Source: Salisapilia sapeloensis CBS 127946 (Eukaryota > Protista > Oomycota). Taken from it: a DNA stretch of 64,000 nt. Location of the stretch: the NCBI GenBank assembly GCA_023334545.1, contig JAADVB010000008.1, forward strand, positions 1-64,000, written 5' to 3'. Shown piece after piece: positions 20,559-33,012 of this stretch (positions are counted from its first letter, which is position 1; every line of letters begins with the position of its first letter). The position numbers were made by a program, and so were the translations under genes. Under the pieces are notes generated by a model, which saw only the letters and a list, made by a program, of their open reading frames with translations, was not told the DNA's origin and did no database searches.

Positions 20559-23500
20559 ATGAGTCTACGCGGGATATGGGAGGAGTACCAGGCAGACGGC
20601 AACGAATATGTGATGCATTCGTCTGTCCAGAAGATGGTGGATACGCATGGTGAATCGATGGTAGCGACGGAGTTTGCACAGGCAGCAGAGTCACTCATGT
20701 CAGAAGAGGAACTGATCAAGATGCTCAGTGTCGGACCAAACGGTCAGTTTGAGACAGCGTATAGTTTTGTTGGCTTGCTTTTAAAAGAAGAGGCGTTGCA
20801 ACCTAGCGTTATCGATATGCTGCTTGAAAAGGTATGTTTATTGGTTTATGATATCGTCAAGAAGGACTTTCATGTATGTTATAATCTAGTTATCAGAGTA
20901 TTCGGCTATGATGGAGGTTGAATCGATGGAAAAAAACGTACCGAAGCTCATATTGCGAGAATTGAGATGGATGGACATTGTTGTTGAGCCTCGAAAGCTC
21001 GTTGAAAAGTTGTTGGAAGCACTCCCAGTTTTTGCACCAGCTCTGCAAAAGGAAATTATCTACATTTTACCTGAAATTGCAAGTGACGAGAGTTCGGAAT
21101 TGGTGATTGAGTCTCTATTGGAGCTTATTCGAGCTGAAGAATCTCTTGTCGTAAGCTGCATTGAAGCGCTGAGTAATTTTAACGAAGGCAATGAGCAAAC
21201 CGAGCGTGTCTTGGTATGCGTGCTTGAACGACTGGATTCATCTCCTTTAACAGACCTCCCAGCCGTTGTCAAGTATCTCGTCCAAGAGACACCGGTTGGA
21301 CATCTCGAAAACGTCGTTGATGACCTTTGTGATAAAGTCAGTAAAGCAGTTTCCTTTGGTGGGAAGGACATGGAAAATAATGCAATGAGTGAATCTACCA
21401 ACGCAAGCTCCGAGAGTGAAGAATCTCTTATTGTCGCGAGTATATCCCAAGCCTTTCGCATTCGTAGTGAATTGCTCCAGGTTTTTTTCGCACGATTAGA
21501 GGCAGAGAAGACAGTGTTAACGATACTAGACGTTTGGCTCATAGCGGCTATCCACTCCATTCCTCACTATCAGCAAAAGGTCGAGAAAATGATCAAGAAG
21601 AAGATACAGTCATCTCAGCTCACATCGACACTATTGATCGAGAGCATCGTGGCTCATGCAAGTGCCTTTGAACCGCACTTTTCATCCATGCTACGCCTTG
21701 CATCCACATTGCTGTCTACAACTTCTGGTACGAAGTCGTCCGAAATGGGAAAGCTATTATTTGAACTCTTGTTTGAGGAACTAGCCTCTCGCAGACATGA
21801 TGGCAGCAAAGTTGGGTACCATCAAGACCAAGTCGTGATGACTTTACTTGGCCATGCTTTGGCACATACCACCGCAGCCTCTGCTTCTGCGATCGACACC
21901 CTGTCTCTGCTTGTAGCAGTCGAACCGTCCTATGCATCATCCTCCCCGTTCCCACTTCCGTACAGCCAGACACCAGCTCGTCGACGATCGCGGTTGAAAC
22001 TGTTTCTACCGTCGTTGAAGCAGTTGCTAGACATCCTTGAAGTGTGTGGTCAAAAGCAAGCACGACAGATCTATGAGCTTTTATTTGCCATCGGTGGACA
22101 GGATGAAACAGAGCTATGCACATTGATGCGCAAACAGTGTTTCCATCAAGATCTCCGATATCGGTACATGGGTATTTTAGCTGCGATCGCTCGACTTGAA
22201 AGCATGCTCGTGTTCTTTCGAGAGCGTGCGAAGAACAACAGTGAGGAAGAGAGAGTCTCATTTGAAGAGCAATCTGGAAAAGCGTTTTCAAATTGTTTAA
22301 CTGAGCTTCATGAAAGCTGTTTGCAGAGTGCAGAGTGCATGCGTTTCATGCTAGATGAACTAGCGAGACTCGTGCGGTCTGTCAAGATGGATCGATTAGC
22401 ACAAATGCTCATTTATCAAGTGTTTGAACAGTACATGGAAATGCTGGAAGCTCGTTTTATGCTGGACTTTGACTTTAAAGAGAAGGAGAAGGGGAAATAC
22501 CAGAAGATGGTGCTGGATGGATCGATGAAAAGCGAACTCTGGTTTGGTCTAGATGATAAGGTATTTTTCTCTTTCGATTGTCTCTATTAAAAGTGTGCTA
22601 ACTATAGTTGATGGTAGAAATGTCCGGTGTACTTGCGGATTCTAGACCTCGTGCTATCCCCGAACGTATCTGATCAAGATTCGCTCTTGTACTTGAACTC
22701 GTTACTCTTAGCTGTCCTCACTTCTGCCCAGCGGCTGGATCAATTAAGTGAAATCGAGTGCGTACTCATTTGTCCGCTACAAATGGTCGAGTATGTCTTG
22801 TATATTATTTTGTTATTGCTTATGTACTTATCTTGTGAGTTAGACCTTCGATCTTGGATGAAGTGGGTGAGATGGAGACAGAGGTACAAGATGTCGTATG
22901 TCTTACGTTCTGGCATGCCATCCAGTGGATGCGATCAGTGCTTAACTTCTTTACACGTGATGAAACACCTTCAAGCGAGTACTACAAAAATAAGATTCCA
23001 GAGCGTCTAGAGAACCTAGTGCAGTTAGAAACAAGTATGCTGGAGAAGCTCCTGCCTCGGTGTAGTACCTTTATCCCACCGCGTATCCAAACATCTCTCC
23101 AGTCTACAACAACCACACAGTTTAGTAAAACTGCGGATGGCAAAGGAAAAGGTAAGAAGGCATTGAGTGGCTTCGAAGATCGTGTCGAGTTTGTCAGATC
23201 AAGTTTCACGCCACTACGAGTCGATGTCGTGAATATCCTGACGTATCCTCGTTTCTACGGAGCTCTAGCAGTACTTCCATCCAGCGGCATGACGTCGAGT
23301 TTACTAGATGATTTACCTTTGATCCATATACTCGTGCGTTTACTCGTGGAGTACGCTTCTGGGTGTTTAGACCGCGAGAAGAAGAAAAAGTCCATGCCAT
23401 TCTTACGCCATGCAGCTACCGATGCATTACGTGGGACTGGCGTAGAAGACATGACGACAAGAGAATTGCTTCAGAAGATGTATTCATCTCGTGTCTTATT

Positions 23501-24803
23501 AGCGACAGGAGCCTACGCTCGTCATGTCTTAGCTTTCTTTGTCCAGGCAGAAGAAGAGGAAATAGACTACAGCTTGGATCCGTGTGCTAAGCTGTTGCAA
23601 GAGTACCTCTCTCTCGTCCTGATCTTTTCCCAGACGCAAGTTCAAGACACGATGAATAGTCATAAGCCTTTAGAAAAGATCGTAAGCATCCAACAACTTC
23701 AAGTGCTCTTGCTCCCAGAGAAAGATCGACTAGAGTACGCGACACCTGACGTCGATTTATTCAAACGCATCGTCCAGCGGTGCTTCGATACTGTCTTAGG
23801 CTACAAGTGTACCGTTCGTAGTGAGTTATCCAGTGCAGCGGTGTTACTCAAGAGTCTACGCTCTCTCCTCGGACTCTTATATGGATACGATGCATCTCTC
23901 GTGCTTTCGTACTGTAAGAAGCTTCGACTGAGTGATCAAGGCGCCGCAGCACGTGTGACTGGATTCGACATGTCAAAGAATATTAGTGAACTAGCGTATT
24001 CGTATTTAGAGAAAAACTGGGCGGCAGAGCATCGTAAAAGCAGCAAGTTTTCGTATAAATCAGCTGATCTAGACCTCGTCCTGCGCTGTTATATCGAACA
24101 GTCTCCTGTGGCGTTAGATGCCGTTGAAACGCTGGCGGTGGAAGGGTTCATGGACATGATTGAACGCGGATCGGACCAATCGATAACGTTCTCGACGCTC
24201 ACGGGGAAGACGATAATCGTGTACCATCGCGTCATGCTCGATACGCTCGTCGCAGCTACAGTACGTCTAGATATGGATGCTGTAGTAGGGGAGAAAGTTG
24301 GCGTGGCACTCAACTACTTGCTCCAAGCAGCGTTGCTCTTTCAGCTCCTCGTCGCTGTAACGAAAAGCTACCAGAAACCAGCACTCTTTTCATCTGTCCT
24401 CAAGCACGGTCGTCGATTCATCGAGATGGTGTTGTCCGTCATGCCGTTCCTCGAAGATCACTTTCGAGATGAGAATGAACGTGTGATTAAAGTCATCGCG
24501 ACGGTCCAAATGGCTACTAGACGTATGCAAGTGTTATGTGCACATGGCAAGTTGGTAAAAGACAAAGCTGCATCGGCGCAAGTACCGATGGTAAAGAAGT
24601 TACTGGAAAAGTTGATTTATCGGAGTGAACAACTAGCGACGGCAAATGGTGTCTTGGATGCGTATACGATGGGTGTCTTGAAGAATCGTCGATTGGATGG
24701 CACAACGATATCGAAAGATGAGTTGGAAAAGACACAGGAGAGTGAAGAGAGTGAGAGTGAAGAGGAAGAGGATGATGGAGAATCGACTGGAGAAGAAGAG
24801 TAA
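20559..24803 (+). CDS. FANCD2: Fanconi anemia group D2 protein; 4 exons
   Basis: LILRELRWMD...LQKEIIYILPEI, LPAVVKYL, the monoubiquitination-site context LMRKQCFHQDLRYRYMGILAAI, and C-terminal VQMATRRMQVLCAHGK...VPMVKKLLEKLIYR...MGVLKNRRLDG. The three introns splice in phase. Confidence 0.9.
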
Positions 24804-24914
24804 TCGGACGTTGGAATCAGATTTATTTTTACCAGAGTACAAGTGAAACGGACCGGTCGTTATACTCCAAAAGTGTTCTTGAAAGATGACTGTTGGATAG
24901 ATGAAGCTTATCGG

Positions 24915-27900
24915 ATGGCGTCACCTACGAAGAGTAAAAAGACACACAAAACACTTCAGCAGAGAAGGTTTGTATTATAGATTAAGAGAGAGAGAGATTG
25001 GTATTGAAGATAAGTGTGGGAATAGAGTACAAAGCGAGTCGGAGGTGGTGTCATTGCCGAGTCTACCGAAGCCAAAGCATGGAGCTGAACGCACGCAGAG
25101 ACAACGACCGAACAAGTCAAAGGTATACATCTACATGCCACATGATACACATTTCGTATAGAGTGTTATATCAAGTGGATTATATACATGTAGGCGCTGC
25201 AACTTCCAGGCGTAAGGTCTTTCAAGACAAATGGGGCGGTCGACGCTAGTGGCGAGGTGCGTTGTTTCTCCTCTTTTATCTCTTAATCGATAGACATGAC
25301 TCTATGTATCCACAGGAGTTGGAAGTATTGAAGAGTATACTAGTTCGAGAAGGATACTTGGAACGCCTATCTCAGCTATGTCGTTCTCGAACGGTCACAG
25401 GCGTGTATTTAAGTGAAACCATTCATGTGCTAGACCTCGTTCGATCTTCGACAGTCGACGTTGTGGAATCTATCTGTTCTTGGCGACGAAAAGCGAAGAT
25501 GTCGGATCCATTTCCTTGGAACGGGCACAACTACTTATTAAAGATCCCTTCTGACCTAGATTTTTTAGATGAGGAAGAGCTGCTAGTCCAATGGCTTGGC
25601 TTTAGTCTTATTAGAAACCCTTTTATCCTCCCTCTACATCTCGATGCACCATCTACAGTCTCTAACATCCAAGAGCTATCGGATACGAATTATACATCTG
25701 TAGGAGGACAGAACTTTGTGCGTGTCATTGAAGAACGTGTGAAGACAGCAGAAGCTGTACGATCAGCTTCACGTGAAGCTCTTCTTCGAGCAGAACGTAG
25801 GAGACCAAAGCATGCTTATGAGACACCAGTGATAAACGACCAGGCGTGCATGACAAAGCAAAAGGAAGCATTGCTACCGGTACATCTGCAACTCTTAACG
25901 CAGAAGAGGAGACCAAATGCTCGATTTATAGCAGCTCTTGCGTCTCAGATTGGTGAAGATGATTTGAAGCGTATGGAGGGTGCCAAGCAGGTGCTATTGA
26001 AGGAAGAAGAGCAGTATGGTCGACTTACGAGGAACTTGAACGGTCGGATTGTACCAGAGGAAGAAGCAGTGAAAGAGAGAAAGATGATTGACATGTCTGG
26101 TGATGTCTATGCTGCGAAAGGATTGGAAGGTGAGAAGGCAGAGGAAGAGCGAGTGCTGGAAGGCAATGTGCATGTGCAGAAGAAGGCCAGTCTACTTGGA
26201 CCAGTGACCAAGACACGTATGTATGCTGTATGACGATATACAACATAAATGTAGATGACAAATGGACGTGGATGTTGTAGGTGTTAAACCTGTCCTTCGA
26301 TCGGTCGCAAAGCGATCGCGTGGAGCTCAGTACAAGATGGGATTAGAATGTGATCGACAGATGAATGCAGATCTTTTGCTTCGTATTAACAGACTACGAG
26401 AAGAGATTGAACGCAAGGAGATGGACATTGCAGATTTTGAAAGTGTTCCTGGTATTGAGCTCTATACGTCCGACTTCAAAACGTATGTGTCGGATGCTCG
26501 AGCACTTGTACTCCGATGTCGACGTGAATTGGAAGAAAAGATATATATTTACAATCGAAAAGAAGAGAATATCGATCGGAAGCAAGAGATTCTGTCTGCT
26601 TTCCAAGAAACTTGCAAAGAGACGATACAAGAGCAACGTAGTGCCCGTATTAATGAGTTTAGAGATAATTATACTGTAGAGAATAATAGCAAGGAAGAAT
26701 TGACGCGTTTTGCACCATCGACAGAGAAGAAGTTGGCAATAAAGCAGTTAGAAAAGGAAGCTGAAGTCGATGAACATGCGCAGTTGACGCCAGTTGTACA
26801 TCACATGTGTGCTCAGGTGATTCAGAAGATGGCGAGAGGTATGATTACACGTGCCGCCGTCTCGAAACTACGTGTAGAAGTGTTTGTTTCCAGTAAATAC
26901 ATCCAAGCAGTCGTGAGAGGCTTCCTCGTCAGGAGGAAAGTATCGAAGGCGTATGCTCAGAACAAGGCGGTGCTGATTATCCAGCGATATGCTCGAGGTA
27001 TGATTGCTCGAGTGAGCATAAAGGAACGTAGGAGACAATTTTATATCCTCCAAAGCGTCCGTACGATCCAACGGTTTGTACGAGGGAGACGTGGACGGAA
27101 GCGGATGGTAAAGGTGCGGGAATTAGTGACAGCGAAGAGGTCGTTGATGGACGTCTCGGAACGATTAGAAGTGAATAGTATTAAAGAACTAGCAGAGGCG
27201 TGTTGGCGTATGGTGCCTATACCGAGTCGACAGGTTGCAGAACATTTGAAACCGGAGAATCAAGTGCAGTTGCCACTTGTAATACTTGGTCTCGTGCGTA
27301 TCCTACGTCTTATGCTTGTAGATAGTGATGATCAAGTGGATGTGAGGATGATGAGATGGCGGGAGGCAGCTGCATTTCTTAAGTGTGCCGGTAGTGTGCG
27401 TCGGAGGATGGAAAAAGTAGCTGCGGCAACGTACAACAAGTATTTACGATCATCAGATCTGTTATCCAGTCTCGTAGCAGTCTACCAGTCGGACAATGAG
27501 TTTCATGTCGATACGTTTAGTCGATTGAAACGAGGTCATCTTGCAGCTACGAGTATCTATGACTTTATCGTAGCATATCATGTCGTCCAAGAGCTCCAGA
27601 CAGCTCTACCAGTAGATGAATTAGATGAAGATCCTGTCTTTCGCTTCGATACTAGTTTATCGAAACAAGAGAAACAAAAGGAAGAGATTGAACGACAAGA
27701 GAACGTCGTACAAGATGCATGTACGGAACGAAAGTTTGTCCCGATAGAGTTACTTAAAGCGCCGGGCTATCCATTGCATAGACGTCGACCTTTGCTCGTT
27801 GTCTTTGCTCATGATGTTCCACAAGTATCTGTAAAAGCATTGATCGAACAGTTAAATAAACATCTACCTGGTCTATTCGTTCATATCGATCGTGAAAAGA

Positions 27901-30900
27901 TGGAAGAGGAAAGTGAAGATGATTATGCCTATAAAGAGATCTCAAGTGCAGTAAGCATGGGCTATGCAGTCTTCATCGAACGTGACATTGGACTAGGAGA
28001 TGCAAACCAACGTCGATTTGTCGGTGCATTCTCGTCCTTGGCATCTGCAATTCATCCATCTCCATGCTGTATCCTCGTTCGAGGGAGTGAAATGAACACA
28101 TACGACACTACACCAGAACTTGATGTTTATAAACGCAAGGAAATGGTCGATGCAGAGCTCAAATGTACATTCGAAAGAGGTGCCAAGCATTTGGAAACGT
28201 TATCTCAGAGCCATTGCTTGGAGGAAATAAAGAGACTATCTACATTAGAAGAACCTTTTACAGAGATAGTTGTCGTCATGGAAGCTGTCATCATGCTACT
28301 TGCACCTGGCCAAACGTATGGTGGTCCGCTTCCTGCATCCAGAGGCATTAGCTGGCAACTCAGTCGACAATTGCTTCGTGACCCGGATAAGATTCTACAG
28401 CGTATAGCAAGCGTCCGTCCTCGTTCGATTACAATGGATAATCTATCAACGTTAGATCAGTACGTAAACGACAGGTATTGGCCTCGAATTGAAAACGTTC
28501 ATGGACTTGGTATCGCCGCTTGTGTCGTACTAGCTCTAGCCGGATGGGTTGGAGCGTTTATCACAGCAGCTCACTTGATGTGTGATCAAGGTGGTGTCTC
28601 TGAAGCTATTGGTCGCCATTCACCTGTCCCGCATCTCTTCAATCGTGTCGTCGAGTTCCAGAATAACTCTGTTGCGAGTCTTAAAGCAGGTGAAACGGAA
28701 GCACTCAAGTGTCTGTTAGATGCTGTCTTACTAGACGTACGTGTCTATCGAACTAGTACACTTGTACGTGGTCGAAGGTGTATTGTAAGTATCTTTCAAG
28801 AATGTCAAATGTACTTTTTCCATCTCTACGATCCGATCGGGAACAATGTGTGGTGGAAGGCAGTGCCTGAAAGCGACGTCGACCGATTGCTTAGTCCGAA
28901 CTCGTTTGAAAGAGCGGATAAAAAGAGACCACCAAAAGATCGAAAGGAGATGCTCAAGCGTCTTTGTAATTTGTGTCGCTTAGATCGACGAAGAGATAAA
29001 GTAGGTAGTGCTACAGATGTTGCTGGTAACTTCATATTTAATGTCCGACCGCACTACGTTCGTTTATATCAACGAACGATCAGTCTTGCTGGTCGAAAAG
29101 CGAGTATTACGATGGAAGAAGTATCTCGAGGTCGCATTCGTCTCGATGTGTTCATTCATAAAAGCTCACAGAGTCAACGTATTAAATGCGATGTGAATGT
29201 CGAGCGTATACTCGACCGCATGTCGTTTGAACGTGCGCAAAAGATGTTTATCGATCCTCTTCATGTTCCGCTTTTAATTCTCGATCGATTGCACTTGTAT
29301 CAAATTTATCAGACGAATGTCCGGAAGGCACAAAAGAGTGCCTTGGATGTGCATTTGCATGTCAATACACAGGAGAAGAGTAGAGGACGAGTGATGATGC
29401 GACAGGCCGTACGACATCGACAGCTTCAAGGTGTTTGGATCGGGACATTGTATCAAAACTACTTTGATCAATGTCTTACGTTGGAGCTATACTGTCAATC
29501 GACTAGCACTCAGTTGGAAACAAAGCTGAATATGAAAGATATTAAGACAAGTAGAGGCAAGATGCAAGGTAGGAAAAGAGAGATTGTAAACGAGATGGTG
29601 CGTACTTTGGTTTGCGTTCTTAATGAAGAAGGTGAAAGTGTAAAGGCATCCCATTGTAGAAGAACGCTGGCGAGGTTCCCATGCACACTTTTGTATACTT
29701 TTAATCCATATCAAGCCCTTCAAAAGCATCAAGCGCAAGGCATGTACGTTCAAGTGGAACGTCAAGATAAAAAGTATGATGGCAAACTCACGTCTCAACA
29801 ATCTTCCACATTTGTCTTCCGAATGTGGTTACCGGATACTTGTGAAGAGCACGAGTTGCTCTTGTTTAGTGAAGAAGCTACTACTGCATTAGGTTTAAGT
29901 AGCTCCAAGGTATCTGTAGAAGACGATATTACCATGTTAAAGAGACTTGTATCCATGTTCCAATGGGACCAAGATCGACGTCGAATCGTTGCTGCGCTAT
30001 CTACCGGTTACCACGAAGCGACATTAGTAAAGAAGAAGGAATCTGATATTGTAGAACCCTCTGCACCAGTGAAAGCAGTCAGTATGGAGGATTGGACGCA
30101 TAAACTCTCGTGTGTTCATCTCCTGGATACTTCGCTGGATGAAGATGAACCAGAATCGACCGGATGCTATGTATTGGGTAGGGAAGAGCCGTTGCATAGT
30201 GCTAGTTATCGTCTGCATGGTGACTTTATCGTCGTGAAAGCCACGATGCAGGCGCAAGTGCTCGAGAAGATCGTACCTTGCATACCTACGGATCGAGTGA
30301 AAGAAGTAGATACGTTCATACTGTCGATACATTACTACCATCCTGCATCCAGTTTAGCTTGTTCCACTGCGATTCAAGGTCGGATGGAACTCCGGCAAGT
30401 TGTCGGTCCAGACCAAGCACACCTCATCTCCTCTACATCCGTTCATCAGCTCATTCAGCATATCGTCACGACTAGAACAGAACTGTCGTATGATGAAGAT
30501 GGACAAGAGCTAAGTGCTACGTTCCTCAAGGATCATGTATATAGAAAGCAAAAGGCTACACCGATCACAGCCGTGTGGAGTAAGGACACGGCTATGAATG
30601 AGAATAAACTGATACGTCAACGAAAGGAACGTGGTGTAAAGGTTGCGTCGAAAGCAATGTCCATTCATCCACACGGTCGTGTCATCCTAACAGCTTACAA
30701 CTTACGCCAAGAAGATGATGAATTAGCTCATAAGATCCGGCTACGTATCGATGCGTACGTCTGTGAAACGTCCGCAAGACTTTCACTGCTTCTAGATGAA
30801 GCTGATCTGTTGCCGTTAGTAGCTGATGCTTATGATGACTTTTTAAACGTACGCTTTGATAGTGTAGAACAAGTAAATAGTCTCGTTCTACTCGTCTTTA

Positions 30901-31763
30901 GTCGGGTGAATATTGAATCTCGACAAGATGGAACGGTCGATCGTTTATTCATACAAGAAGATGTGCGCTCAAGTGAAGACAGCACGAATAGAACACAGAC
31001 GGAGTGTATTCCGCTGTTTAAATGTGTCCGACAGATTGGACATGTACCTGTTGTCGTCAAGATTTCTACGTGCAAGTCGATGGACTCACTCGAGATGGAC
31101 ATGTATGATCCTCAAACGAGTACAAGAGCCACATTGTCTATCTCTCTTACGACACTTCAATGGATACTTGGGCTATCGTCATTTACGATCGACATGCTCT
31201 CCTCTCCTCCTATCCCTCTACTAGCGATTATTAAGCATATTGGTGCATTCGTGAAGATACATCGATATAGAAGAGAGTATGATGGTGTCTGGACACTGGA
31301 AGCAGAGCTCTCCATGGATAGTGATAGTATGGTACGAAGTCAGGAAGCATTTGAAAGACATGAAGGTGTTCTGTTGAATGACATTAGGGAGGAAGCAAGT
31401 CTTTTATGTGCACCAGAGTGGATGCAAGCGAGAGAGACGATAGCATCTTGGCAAGGTATGAAGGTATCGGGAGCCAACGGGTATTGTGCTGTGCATTTGT
31501 CTCTGCAGCGTGAACAAAGTGATGGAGACGTGGAGAGACAGGTTTTATTATGCACGCTGCTATCTCCATCTACAAGTCATGTCCTCACAACAGCCTTCGT
31601 TGACCAAGAGTTTTGGTCGTACGTTGGAGATGGAGCATGGGAATCGAACGAGTCGATGCTAGAATACCTTGGCACGCGAGTATGCATATCTGTTGGACAG
31701 ACAGACGATGTAGATATCGACATGGCGAACGCTCAAGATCTGTGGCACATTACGCTTCAGTAG
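24915..31763 (+). CDS. Giant (~2,200 aa) uncharacterised protein with 4 IQ motifs, two dynein-stalk-like domains and C-terminal beta-rich repeats; 5 exons
   Basis: Start MASPTKSKK at 24915. Four GT-AG introns join it to ORFs 25262-26233 and 26262-31763. IQ motifs: IQKMARG, IQAVVRG, IQRYARG, IQRFVRG. Confidence 0.85.
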
Positions 31764-31903: not shown

Positions 31904-33012
31904 ATGATGGCGAGAGATAGTTCGACAGCAAGTGCGAGCAATGACAAAGAGGAGCTCAGCCTTTCGGTGTCGGATGCTGCTTCCCTTCGGACTGCAATTG
32001 AAAATGCCATGAAGCTTCGAGATACATATCAGAGGGAGAATGCGGCGTATGTGAGCACTTGCTAGCATTCAGATTTAAACGTGGTCTAATACTTGTTCCT
32101 CTTTGTAGACTGCAGCGAAGAGTGGCAGGTATATTTCAAAAGACACAAGAGACAAATCCTGCTGGTGGAAATGAACCAAGGAATAAAGCAAAGGAACAGA
32201 AGAATAATGCGAATGAAAATGAAAAGAGGTATCTCGAGTGTCTTCGAGGCATTCATGATGCAAAGAAACAAACAGCTGCAGCACGTGGCTCGTATGACAA
32301 ACTCGCTTTAGATCTGCAGGCCAGGCTCGACGAGAAAGAGGCCAAAGTGACGGAAATCCAGGACGCTTTCTTACAGTTCAAACGTGAAGTTGCGAAGAAT
32401 GCAGAGAATACACGTACTGGAAAGCCGATCCCAGCGAAAGTCGTGTTGCAGTTTGAAAATGCGGAAGTGAAGAAAGACCAAGATGTCGAACGCGTTCGAC
32501 TGAAAAACATTAATTTGCGTATGAATTTGAAGAAATTAGAGCAGTCATTAAAAGCAAAGGAGCAACTTGCGGAAGGACTTCACTTGATTGACTTTGAACA
32601 GCTAAAGATTGAAAATCAAACTTTAAATGAGAAGATTGAGGAGCGAAATGAAGAGCTACACAAGTTGAGAAAGAAGACGACGGGTACCGTGCAAGTCGTC
32701 ACTCATATCAAAGAGAAATTGCAATTCGTTCTTGCTGAAAATCAAACACTCAAGCGGGAGCTTGCAGCATTGGAAGAATCCTTAACAGGACATCGAGATC
32801 AACTTGCAAAATGCAAGAAGACACATGAATGTCAACGAAAAGCTTTGCATCGGTATCAGAACAAGGAAGGCTTGGCATCTTCTGATCGACTGATTGAAGA
32901 CTATGAAAAACGAGACGAAGAGTTGTTGGAAGTAGAACGTAGACTACTGGAGCTTAAACAGCTTCACGCCCATCTTACCAGAAGTCTTCGAAAGATTCCA
33001 ACAACATCATAA
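31904..33012 (+). CDS. CCDC96: CCDC96/CFAP184 (DUF4201) ciliary coiled-coil protein; 2 exons
   Basis: RLKNINLRMNLKKLEQSLKAKEQLAEGLHLIDFEQLKIENQTLNEKIEERNEELHKLRKK...VTHIKEKL. One phase-2 intron near 32048-32109. Confidence 0.88.

What the first reader, a model, noticed from the sequence alone, without database searches (positions are those of the whole stretch)
26800..28580. Non-motor giant protein with four IQ motifs and two dynein-stalk-like microtubule-binding domains
Segment ~28180-28580 (LEEIKRLSTLEEPFTEIVVVMEAVIMLL...SWQLSRQLLRDPDKILQRI...ITMDNLSTLDQYVND...LALAGWVGAF) follows the dynein heavy-chain stalk-head pattern (ELKS..PP..V..VMEAV..LL...W...K.LL.D..FL..L...I......L..Y...P.F......AA..L..WV.A). 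Segment ~27150-27600 (SIKEL...W.EAAAFL...VYQSDNEFHVDTFSRLKRGHLAATSIYDFIVAY) is a more diverged copy. There are no AAA P-loops anywhere in the protein. Two MT-binding heads right after a calmodulin-binding IQ array suggest a Ca2+-regulated microtubule cross-linker or tether. It lies next to CCDC96 on the same strand.
Basis: partly seen in the sequence, partly recalled or inferred. Interest (0 to 1): 0.8.

Follow-up and report, generated by a model that had tools for sequence, protein, structure and literature searches.

The report
Motor-less protein with two dynein microtubule-binding heads
A 2198-residue protein, found so far only in stramenopiles, has four calmodulin-type IQ motifs and two copies of the microtubule-binding head otherwise known from dynein motors, but no motor, so it may be an undescribed calcium-sensitive microtubule tether.

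Summary

- **Gene model.** The ORF is the last exon of a five-exon, expressed gene: ATG at 24915, stop at 31763, 2198 aa. RNA contigs show four GT..AG introns.
- **Second head (nt 28152-28586).** The family profile hits 46 distinct dynein heavy-chain sequences in the PDB, at their MTBD in every alignment printed (best E 1.4e-10). The AlphaFold2 model (pLDDT 92.7) superposes on dynein MTBDs at Z 12-15 and rmsd 2.0-2.9 Å.
- **First head (nt 27171-27611).** It is a diverged duplicate: profile-profile probability 96.9% against the second head, and E 3e-5 against dynein.
- **IQ motifs (26820-27098).** Four motifs are conserved family-wide. They lie on one predicted 123-residue helix that continues as coiled-coil strand CC1 of the first head.
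- **No motor.** There is no Walker A motif, AAA ring or dynein linker. The second head is inserted in a P-loop-kinase-like fold that lacks a P-loop.
- **Family.** 168 relatives were found. Every named one is a stramenopile. Among downy mildews, only the zoospore-forming Plasmopara appeared.

Microtubule binding, calmodulin control and flagellar location are inferred, not shown. I found no paper describing such proteins. Other first-stage notes claim further motor-less MTBD modules elsewhere in this genome; I did not check them.

The parts
24915..31763 (+). Whole gene. Exons: 24915-24967, 25026-25122, 25194-25256, 25316-26216, 26281-31763 (stop included). Product: 2198 aa.
   Evidence: RNA-run contigs skip 24968-25025, 25123-25193, 25257-25315 and 26217-26280, all GT..AG. 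The spliced translation is open from the ATG at 24915. Homolog P0001 is colinear across the exon 4/5 junction.
25316..26140 (+). Conserved N-terminal domain of unknown fold (about residues 66-340).
   Evidence: Found in more than 50 family members by jackhmmer. The profile of alignment A6 has no PDB match at E<=1. No Pfam match.
26796..27164 (+). One continuous predicted helix of 123 residues. It carries four IQ motifs (26820-26852, 26901-26933, 26979-27011, 27066-27098) and runs on as CC1 of the first MTBD.
   Evidence: AlphaFold2 model helix H10-132. IQ motifs by regex. IQ residues conserved in 75-90% of 47 sequences, and IQ4-to-head spacing is 39 or 41 residues in 44 of 44. Myosin-V IQ hits at E 6.5e-14.
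27171..27611 (+). MTBD1: diverged dynein-type microtubule-binding head (residues about 669-815).
   Evidence: A4 profile against the PDB: top hits are dynein MTBDs, best E 3.1e-5. hhalign A4 vs A3: probability 96.9%, E 1.8e-10. HMM cross-hits. The helix order in the model matches that of MTBD2.
27792..28085 (+). Alpha/beta domain with a P-loop-kinase-like fold but no P-loop. By the alignment ranges, the helix at 28680-28739 closes the fold, so MTBD2 is an insertion in it.
   Evidence: VIA-align Z 8-9.2 to APS kinase, GMP kinase, PSTK and thymidylate kinase over model 338-657. Foldseek probability 0.95-0.96 to guanylate kinase and PNKP. No Walker A. No sequence match in the PDB.
28152..28586 (+). 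MTBD2: dynein-type microtubule-binding head on a short antiparallel stalk stub (residues about 996-1140).
   Evidence: A3 profile against the PDB: 46 distinct dynein sequences, at their MTBD in the printed alignments, best E 1.4e-10. AlphaFold2 pLDDT 92.7, pTM 0.86. Foldseek top 27 hits are all dynein chains, probability 0.95-1.00. VIA Z 12-15.2, rmsd 2.0-2.9 Å over 125-132 residues. PF12777 matches 17 of 68 members.
28680..31211 (+). Repeated four-strand-plus-helix beta modules. Significant copies at 28680-28952, 29058-29240 and 31014-31211, with weaker ones between.
   Evidence: jackhmmer seeded with the first module finds the others at E 5e-4 and 1.6e-8. The model shows beta-beta-beta-beta-alpha units. 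Foldseek probability 0.95 to PUR-alpha repeats, but at low TM-score.
32059..33012 (+). Neighbouring gene for a CCDC96/CCDC113-type ciliary coiled-coil protein (context only).
   Evidence: Pfam PF13870, E 4.9e-39.

Best explanation
The gene encodes a 2198-residue non-motor protein of a family whose named members are all stramenopiles.

Shown here:
- Two domains are homologous to, and fold like, the microtubule-binding domain (MTBD) at the tip of the dynein stalk.
- The two copies arose by internal duplication.
- The best PDB matches are single-headed inner-arm axonemal dyneins. The loop where those dyneins carry their 'flap' has a similar, length-constrained size here.
- Four conserved IQ motifs lie on one long predicted helix that continues, at fixed length, as coiled-coil strand CC1 of the first MTBD.
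- The second MTBD sits on a short stalk stub inserted in a P-loop-kinase-like domain that has lost its P-loop.
- There is no AAA ring, linker or tail.

Inferred:
- Both heads bind microtubules, so one chain can bridge two tubulin sites, or tether something to a microtubule.
- Calmodulin-like light chains on the IQ helix stiffen it. Because dynein heads change affinity when CC1 slides against CC2, these light chains could set the affinity of the first head in response to Ca2+.
- The C-terminal beta modules and the N-terminal domain probably dock the protein to a partner structure.
- The site of action is probably the zoospore or flagellar microtubule apparatus.
For: Domain identity:
- Profile hits to dynein MTBDs: MTBD2 best E 1.4e-10; MTBD1 best E 3.1e-5.
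- The two heads match each other at hhalign probability 96.9%.
- AlphaFold2 models: pLDDT 92.7 and 85.4 with pTM 0.77.
- Superposition on dynein MTBDs: Z 12-15.2, rmsd 2.0-2.9 Å. Foldseek: top 27 hits all dynein.
- PF12777 matches 17 of 68 members.

Selection on the fold:
- The E-to-W and W-to-W spacings in MTBD2 are constant in 50 and 54 of 68 sequences.
- The basic pair after the conserved Trp aligns with 'kk' in DHC2.

IQ coupling:
- One helix, H10-132.
- Spacing of 39 or 41 residues in 44 of 44 sequences, while loops inside the head vary from 9 to 42 residues.
- Myosin-V lever-arm hits at E 6.5e-14.

No motor:
- No Walker A and no dynein Pfam domains.
- The alpha/beta domain matches kinases, not AAA+.

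Real, expressed gene: spliced contigs in three RNA runs.

Flagellar link (weak):
- Named members are zoosporic oomycetes, pelagophytes, Chrysoparadoxa, a MAST and Cantina.
- Among Peronosporales, many Phytophthora species and the zoosporic Plasmopara halstedii appear, but no Hyaloperonospora, Peronospora or Bremia protein of 385-4212 aa.
- IQ and dynein domains are known to be depleted in non-flagellate downy mildews (PMC6264045).
- A CCDC96/113-type gene lies next door.
Against: - No experiment or co-complex model shows tubulin or calmodulin binding.
- The window's own MTBD2 has net charge -2 and carries R-Q where the family consensus has R-R.
- The window's own copies do not reach Pfam MT even at E<=10.
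- The P. infestans ortholog PITG_09411 is not in the 257-gene oomycete flagellar list. That list was built from proteins known in other lineages, so a stramenopile-only gene would not be in it.
- Aureoumbra, which has the gene, is to my knowledge a non-motile coccoid alga.
- I could not inspect model coordinates, so the relative orientation of the two heads is unknown.
Confidence: 0.6

Rival explanations
1. The two heads are true descendants of the dynein MTBD but no longer bind microtubules. They serve as helical protein-protein modules in a calmodulin-binding scaffold that has other partners.
For: - The window's MTBD2 is slightly acidic (net -2), and one of the two conserved basic positions is Gln.
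- MTBD1 is much diverged, with large variable insertions.
- A published precedent exists for a dynein MTBD that probably lost binding through insertions: DNAHX (PMC11785096).
Against: - The MTBD2 core lengths, including the flap-equivalent loop, are tightly conserved across 68 sequences.
- The basic pair is kept in 43-48 of 68 sequences.
- The fold superposes at about 2 Å on microtubule-bound MTBD structures.
Confidence: 0.25
2. It binds microtubules but acts on cytoplasmic, cortical or spindle microtubules rather than on the flagellar apparatus.
For: - The gene is present in Aureoumbra, which to my knowledge is non-motile.
- The ortholog is absent from the curated oomycete flagellar gene list.
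- Transcripts are present in the RNA runs found, whose life stage is unknown.
Against: - In Peronosporales the gene was found in zoospore-forming genera only.
- The closest dynein matches are axonemal inner-arm heavy chains, not cytoplasmic dynein.
- The neighbouring gene is ciliary (weak evidence).
Confidence: 0.3
3. The locus is a decayed, fragmented or misassembled dynein heavy-chain gene.
For: It contains dynein-type MTBDs. AlphaFold DB holds many short entries that look like dynein gene-model fragments with the same fold.
Against: - Spliced transcript contigs cover 24700-29000, from the 5' exons through both heads, and the last exon is one uninterrupted reading frame to the stop at 31763.
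- The gene is flanked by FancD2 and CCDC96/113 genes.
- The same N-domain / IQ / MTBD1 / kinase-like / MTBD2 / beta-module order is kept in dozens of species.
- There is no AAA, linker or DHC_N Pfam match and no Walker A.
- The alpha/beta domain matches kinases, not AAA+.
Confidence: 0.02
4. The resemblance to the dynein MTBD is a chance match of helical, low-complexity sequence.
For: The single-sequence match is weak (E 0.97), and Pfam MT misses the window's own copy.
Against: - The family profile reaches E 1.4e-10 with bias 0.0, and the printed alignments fall on the MTBD. The next non-dynein hits are designed helical proteins at E>0.3.
- An independent fold comparison gives Z 15.2.
- PF12777 is the only Pfam family matched by more than one member.
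Confidence: 0.01

Closest known systems
Microtubule-binding domain of axonemal inner-arm dynein heavy chains (Chlamydomonas DHC2 8glv_Lc, human DNAH1 8i3j, DNAH7 6rza; Pfam PF12777 MT)
   Same: - The same six-helix head between two antiparallel coiled-coil strands.
- Shared conserved elements: the Pro before H1, the V..(M)EAV..LL helix, the Trp plus basic pair, and W-V in the last helix.
- A loop of flap-like length between the first helices.
- Profile E 1.4e-10; Z up to 15.2.
   Different: - No motor is attached.
- The stalk is a stub of roughly 20-30 residues per strand in the model, against about 100 in dynein (my knowledge).
- There are two heads per chain.
- One stalk strand is extended by an IQ helix; the other head is inserted in a kinase-like domain rather than in AAA4.
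Non-motile dynein heavy chains DNAHX and DNHD1 (PMC11785096)
   Same: Dynein-derived proteins that are thought not to move along microtubules.
   Different: They are the converse case. They keep the AAA ring and tail, and their stalk-MTBD is thought to be disabled by insertions. This family keeps only the MTBD and has no ring.
Myosin-V type IQ lever arm
   Same: Tandem complete IQ motifs on a single long helix. The profile hits the myosin Va IQ region at E 6.5e-14.
   Different: - Four motifs spaced 26-29 residues apart.
- The helix leads into a dynein-type head rather than out of a myosin motor.
- The light chains are unknown.
Auto-annotated 'Dynein heavy chain coiled coil stalk domain-containing proteins' of 700-1250 aa in AlphaFold DB (D0NYY5, A0A2P4YTS0, K0SMJ1, A0A5A8D7I2, A0EEA3)
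   Same: Predicted models share the MTBD. For D0NYY5, A0A2P4YTS0 and K0SMJ1 they also share the following beta modules, again without a motor.
   Different: - They are shorter, with a single head and other partner domains (for example WW).
- They are not the same orthologous group.
- They are known only from automatic annotation; I found no paper on them.
- Their organisms are my reading of the accession prefixes.
Nucleoside-monophosphate / APS kinase fold (P-loop kinases)
   Same: The alpha/beta core between the two heads superposes at Z 8-9.2.
   Different: - The Walker A loop is replaced by A-[RH]-D-V-P-x-x-[AS]-K.
- There is no sequence similarity.
- The MTBD2 is inserted into the fold.

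Membership tests
Dynein heavy chain (motor) | Ring of six AAA+ modules with Walker A/B motifs | tested here: not met
   No [GA]xxxxGK[ST] anywhere in 2198 aa. No AAA or dynein Pfam hit. The only alpha/beta domain modelled (residues 535-1400) matches P-loop kinases, not AAA+.
Dynein heavy chain (motor) | Linker and tail (DHC_N1/DHC_N2) | tested here: not met
   Pfam finds only IQ on the long exon and nothing on exon 4. The N-terminal domain profile has no PDB match.
Dynein heavy chain (motor) | Long antiparallel coiled-coil stalk | tested here: not met
   In the AlphaFold2 models the helices flanking MTBD2 are 29 and 33 residues long, head helix H6 included.
Dynein MTBD domain (PF12777 / stalk-head fold) | Sequence-profile similarity to dynein MTBDs | tested here: met
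   - MTBD2 family profile E 1.4e-10; MTBD1 profile E 3.1e-5.
- PF12777 matches 17 of 68 members, best E 2.1e-6.
- The window's own copies alone do not reach Pfam.
Dynein MTBD domain (PF12777 / stalk-head fold) | Six-helix head flanked by antiparallel CC1/CC2 | tested here: met
   - MTBD2: Z 12-15.2, rmsd 2.0-2.9 Å to 6l4p, 8i3j, 5ayh, 3err and 6rza.
- MTBD1: supported only by helix order in the model and by profile homology.
Dynein MTBD domain (PF12777 / stalk-head fold) | Binds the tubulin dimer, with affinity set by coiled-coil registry | not testable with these tools
   Needs co-sedimentation, or a complex model with tubulin.
IQ calmodulin-binding motif | [ILV]QxxxRGxxx[RK] consensus, in tandem on a helix | tested here: met
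   - Four motifs, conserved in the family.
- Pfam IQ gives 19.2 bits against a cut-off of 20.3 on this protein, but above cut-off on relatives.
- Myosin-V hits at E 6.5e-14.
IQ calmodulin-binding motif | Binds calmodulin or a related light chain | not testable with these tools
   Needs a pull-down or overlay with and without Ca2+.
P-loop nucleotide kinase | Kinase-type alpha/beta fold | tested here: inconclusive
   Z 8-9.2 over 130-170 residues. The tool's own note says Z around 8 is near background for large models.
P-loop nucleotide kinase | Walker A GxxxxGK[ST] | tested here: not met
   The loop after the first strand reads AHDVPQVSVK in the window and ARDVPxxAK in the family consensus.
PUR repeat | Beta-beta-beta-beta-alpha repeat pairing into a PUR domain | tested here: inconclusive
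   Foldseek probability 0.95 but TM by target only 0.24-0.27. No sequence match.

The most novel reading that the evidence does not exclude
This family would be the first natural case in which a dynein microtubule-binding head is controlled not by an AAA+ ring but by Ca2+/calmodulin. The calmodulin would sit on an IQ helix that is physically the same helix as stalk strand CC1, making a Ca2+-switchable microtubule clamp. The family would also be the best-conserved member of a wider, undescribed class of motor-less MTBD proteins in stramenopiles and alveolates that build or regulate flagellar or rootlet microtubule arrays.
Probability: 0.25. Interest if true: 0.85.

Novelty: new variant of a known kind. 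Interest (0 to 1): 0.66.

Why it matters
The dynein MTBD is generally treated as a part found only in dynein heavy chains. Its microtubule affinity is set from a distance by the AAA ring, through sliding of the two stalk strands.

This conserved family keeps the head, twice, and has discarded the motor. That has three consequences.

- It shows the head can be reused as a stand-alone microtubule-binding module.
- It offers a natural system for asking how head affinity is set without a ring. The IQ helix fused to CC1 gives a concrete, testable candidate: control by calmodulin.
- It gives oomycete biology a candidate Ca2+-responsive component of the zoospore microtubule apparatus. Zoospore swimming and encystment are known to be Ca2+-controlled.

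The family also shows that Pfam-level annotation misses these heads. The window's copies score nothing in Pfam MT, and database names for the family are 'hypothetical', 'Calmodulin' or 'IQ motif'.

Tried and rejected
- Pfam on the whole ORF and on each head alone gave no MT hit even at E<=10.
- ESM Atlas feature search with the second head gave only unrelated clusters scoring 0.72 or less.
- The word-indexed homolog search with the window protein found a single relative. The exhaustive HMMER search was needed to find the family.
- Literature searches for non-dynein MTBD-like domains, PF12777 and 'stalk domain-containing protein' found nothing relevant. The exceptions were a downy-mildew domain-loss table and the DNAHX preprint.
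- PITG_09411 is not named in any searchable paper. It is not in the supplements of the oomycete flagellar-proteome paper. It is not in the stored part of the P. infestans life-stage RNA-seq tables, which were cut when stored.
- The N-terminal domain profile has no PDB relative.
- I looked for a third MTBD in relatives with a 400-520-residue spacer between the heads and found none.
- The idea that the alpha/beta domain is a decayed dynein AAA module is rejected, because its structural neighbours are kinases.
I could not inspect model coordinates, so I have no inter-head geometry or surface charge.

Full report
**Gene model.**
The finding lies in a 1833-codon ORF at 26262-31763 on the + strand. 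That ORF is not the whole gene. Contigs from three RNA runs laid on 24700-29000 skip four GT..AG introns: 24968-25025, 25123-25193, 25257-25315 and 26217-26280. The spliced message is open from an ATG at 24915 to the stop at 31763, which gives 2198 aa. The first homolog found, P0001 (2453 aa), is colinear across the exon 4/5 junction. FancD2 lies upstream, ending at 24803, and matches PF14631 at E 9e-49. A CCDC113/CCDC96 coiled-coil gene lies downstream on the same strand (E 4.9e-39). The locus is therefore an ordinary, expressed protein-coding gene, not an assembly artefact.

**The observation.**
- Four IQ motifs of the complete form IQxxxRGxxxR sit at residues 552-562, 579-589, 605-615 and 634-644, which is nt 26820-27098.
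- On this protein alone Pfam IQ is just under threshold (19.2 vs 20.3 bits).
- In a 47-sequence family alignment each key IQ position is kept in about 75-90% of sequences.
- The family profile hits myosin-Va lever arms at E 6.5e-14.
- No Walker A motif occurs anywhere in the protein.

**Second head (nt about 28152-28586).**
- The single sequence gives exactly one PDB hit at E<=10. It falls on residues 2805-2911 of Chlamydomonas DHC2, which is that dynein's MTBD, but E is only 0.97. Pfam MT finds nothing.
- The exhaustive HMMER search of 1.84 billion representatives found 168 relatives at E<=1e-3 and 52 at E<=1e-30.
- A 68-sequence alignment of this segment (A3), used as a profile against the PDB, hits 46 distinct dynein heavy-chain sequences. 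The hit coordinates are consistent with the MTBD, and the three alignments printed show it. The best are DHC2 (1.4e-10) and DNAH1 (1.8e-9).
- The next non-dynein hits are designed helical proteins at E>0.3.
- PF12777 is the only Pfam family matched by more than one member: 17 of 68, best E 2.1e-6.
- AlphaFold2 on A3 gives pLDDT 92.7 and pTM 0.86. The top 27 Foldseek PDB matches are all dynein chains, with probability 0.95-1.00 and TM by target 0.60-0.72 for the isolated-MTBD entries.
- In the larger model, VIA-align superposes 125-132 residues of dynein MTBDs (6l4p, 8i3j, 5ayh, 3err, 6rza) on model 461-610 at Z 12-15.2 and rmsd 2.0-2.9 Å.
- The core is under length constraint. The Glu-to-Trp span, which contains the loop where inner-arm dyneins carry the 'flap', is 24 residues in 50 of 68 sequences. 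The Trp-to-Trp span is 42 residues in 54 of 68.
- A basic pair after the Trp aligns with 'kk' of DHC2.

**First head (nt about 27171-27611).**
- A 61-sequence alignment (A4) hits dynein MTBDs as its top PDB matches (best E 3.1e-5).
- It matches the second-head profile with hhalign probability 96.9%, E 1.8e-10.
- The two HMMs cross-hit each other's segments in several relatives, down to about E 1e-7.
I could not fold it alone. In the 866-residue model its helices follow the same order as in the second head.

**Architecture.**
AlphaFold2 on residues 535-1400 with 46 relatives gives pLDDT 85.4 and pTM 0.77.
- Model residues 10-132 form a single helix. It carries all four IQ motifs and then becomes strand CC1 of the first head.
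- The number of residues from IQ4 to the head is 39 or 41 in all 44 sequences measured, whereas loops inside that head vary from 9 to 42 residues.
- After the first head comes an alpha/beta domain (model 338-445). By the alignment ranges, a helix at 638-657 belongs to the same domain.
- Its structural neighbours are P-loop kinases (APS kinase, GMP kinase, PSTK, thymidylate kinase) at Z 8-9.2 and Foldseek probability 0.95-0.96. They are not AAA+ proteins.
- The P-loop position reads AHDVPQVSVK. The second head, on a short stalk stub, is thus an insertion in a kinase-like domain without a P-loop.
- Downstream are repeated four-strand-plus-helix modules. At least three copies are significant by jackhmmer. 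They have a loose Foldseek resemblance to PUR repeats. This agrees with another first-stage note on the same protein.
- The N-terminal domain (about residues 66-340) is conserved family-wide but has no PDB or Pfam relative.
- Relatives fall into two classes by the spacer between the heads: about 135-260 residues or about 390-520 residues.

**Distribution.**
- Every family member that carries an organism name is a stramenopile: Phytophthora (many species, including PITG_09411), Nothophytophthora, Plasmopara halstedii, Pythium, Lagenidium, Aphanomyces, Aureoumbra, Chrysophaeum, Chrysoparadoxa, a MAST and Cantina.
- Database names for these proteins are 'hypothetical', 'Calmodulin' or 'IQ motif, EF-hand binding'.
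- Two word-indexed searches with the P. cactorum ortholog, together covering lengths 385-4212 aa, returned no protein from Hyaloperonospora, Peronospora or Bremia. They did return the zoospore-forming downy mildew Plasmopara.
- This fits the published depletion of IQ and dynein domains in non-flagellate downy mildews (PMC6264045).
- PITG_09411 is not in the 257-gene oomycete flagellar list. That list was derived from proteins known in other lineages.

**Wider class.**
AlphaFold DB clusters contain other motor-less proteins with the same head. Some also share the following beta modules. Examples are D0NYY5 and A0A2P4YTS0 (named 'Dynein heavy chain coiled coil stalk domain-containing protein'), K0SMJ1 (WW domain), A0A5A8D7I2 and A0EEA3. 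First-stage notes report three further motor-less MTBD candidates elsewhere in this genome. I did not verify those. I found no paper describing any of these proteins.

**Mechanism.**
- Shown here: two dynein-derived heads, an IQ helix continuous with CC1 of the first head, no motor, and expression.
- Established knowledge: dynein heads bind the tubulin dimer, with affinity set by the CC1/CC2 registry, and complete IQ motifs bind calmodulin-family light chains.
- Inferred: the protein most likely binds microtubules at two sites, and the affinity of the first head is coupled to light-chain or Ca2+ occupancy of the IQ helix.
- Against this: the window's MTBD2 is slightly acidic and has Gln at one of the two basic positions. 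A non-binding relic is therefore a real alternative. DNAHX is a precedent for a disabled MTBD.
- The flagellar location is inferred only from taxonomic distribution and from the axonemal-type best matches.

**Verdict.**
This is a new, conserved non-motor use of a known domain: a new variant of a known kind, and of clear interest to dynein and flagellar biologists.

Noticed in passing
window 20908-24803 (+): The upstream gene is FancD2 (PF14631), read in two ORFs: 20908-22590 (E 1.1e-35) and 22854-24803 (E 9e-49). They are presumably joined by an intron. Its stop is only 112 nt before the ATG of the gene studied, and single RNA contigs run across both genes.
   Followed up: partly
window 28680-31211 (+): The C-terminal half holds repeated beta-beta-beta-beta-alpha modules. 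jackhmmer copies lie at residues 1172-1262, 1298-1358 and 1950-2015, with weaker ones between. Foldseek resembles them to PUR-alpha repeats and, more weakly, to XRCC4/CCDC61 heads.
   Followed up: partly
same genome, other pieces (notes s1-308082, s1-303212, s1-280852): First-stage readers flagged three more motor-less dynein-MTBD-like modules in other architectures: WW-WW-IQ, an ankyrin/TRAF-zinc-finger giant, and a stalk plus MTBD alone. AlphaFold DB hits (D0NYY5, K0SMJ1 with a WW domain) make such paralogs plausible.
   Followed up: no
PDB 9ya2 chain L: A 162-residue protein of the Toxoplasma intraconoidal microtubule is the only non-dynein microtubule-bound chain among the Foldseek matches to the MTBD2 model (probability 0.77, TM about 0.5). 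It could be another non-dynein use of this fold.
   Followed up: no
relatives P0025, P0029, P0036, P0044 and others: Several relatives, including the pelagophyte members, have a 390-520-residue spacer between the two heads, against 135-260 in the other class, which includes the oomycetes. No third MTBD was detected there, and the extra region was not characterised.
   Followed up: partly
window 28005-28040 region, residues about 940-950: In the kinase-like domain a D-x-G motif after the third strand has an invariant Gly and a nearly invariant (>=90%) Asp across 47 sequences, and a later Gly and Asn are also nearly invariant (D406, G408, G439, N443 of alignment A5). This is stronger conservation than expected for a mere scaffold.
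   Followed up: no
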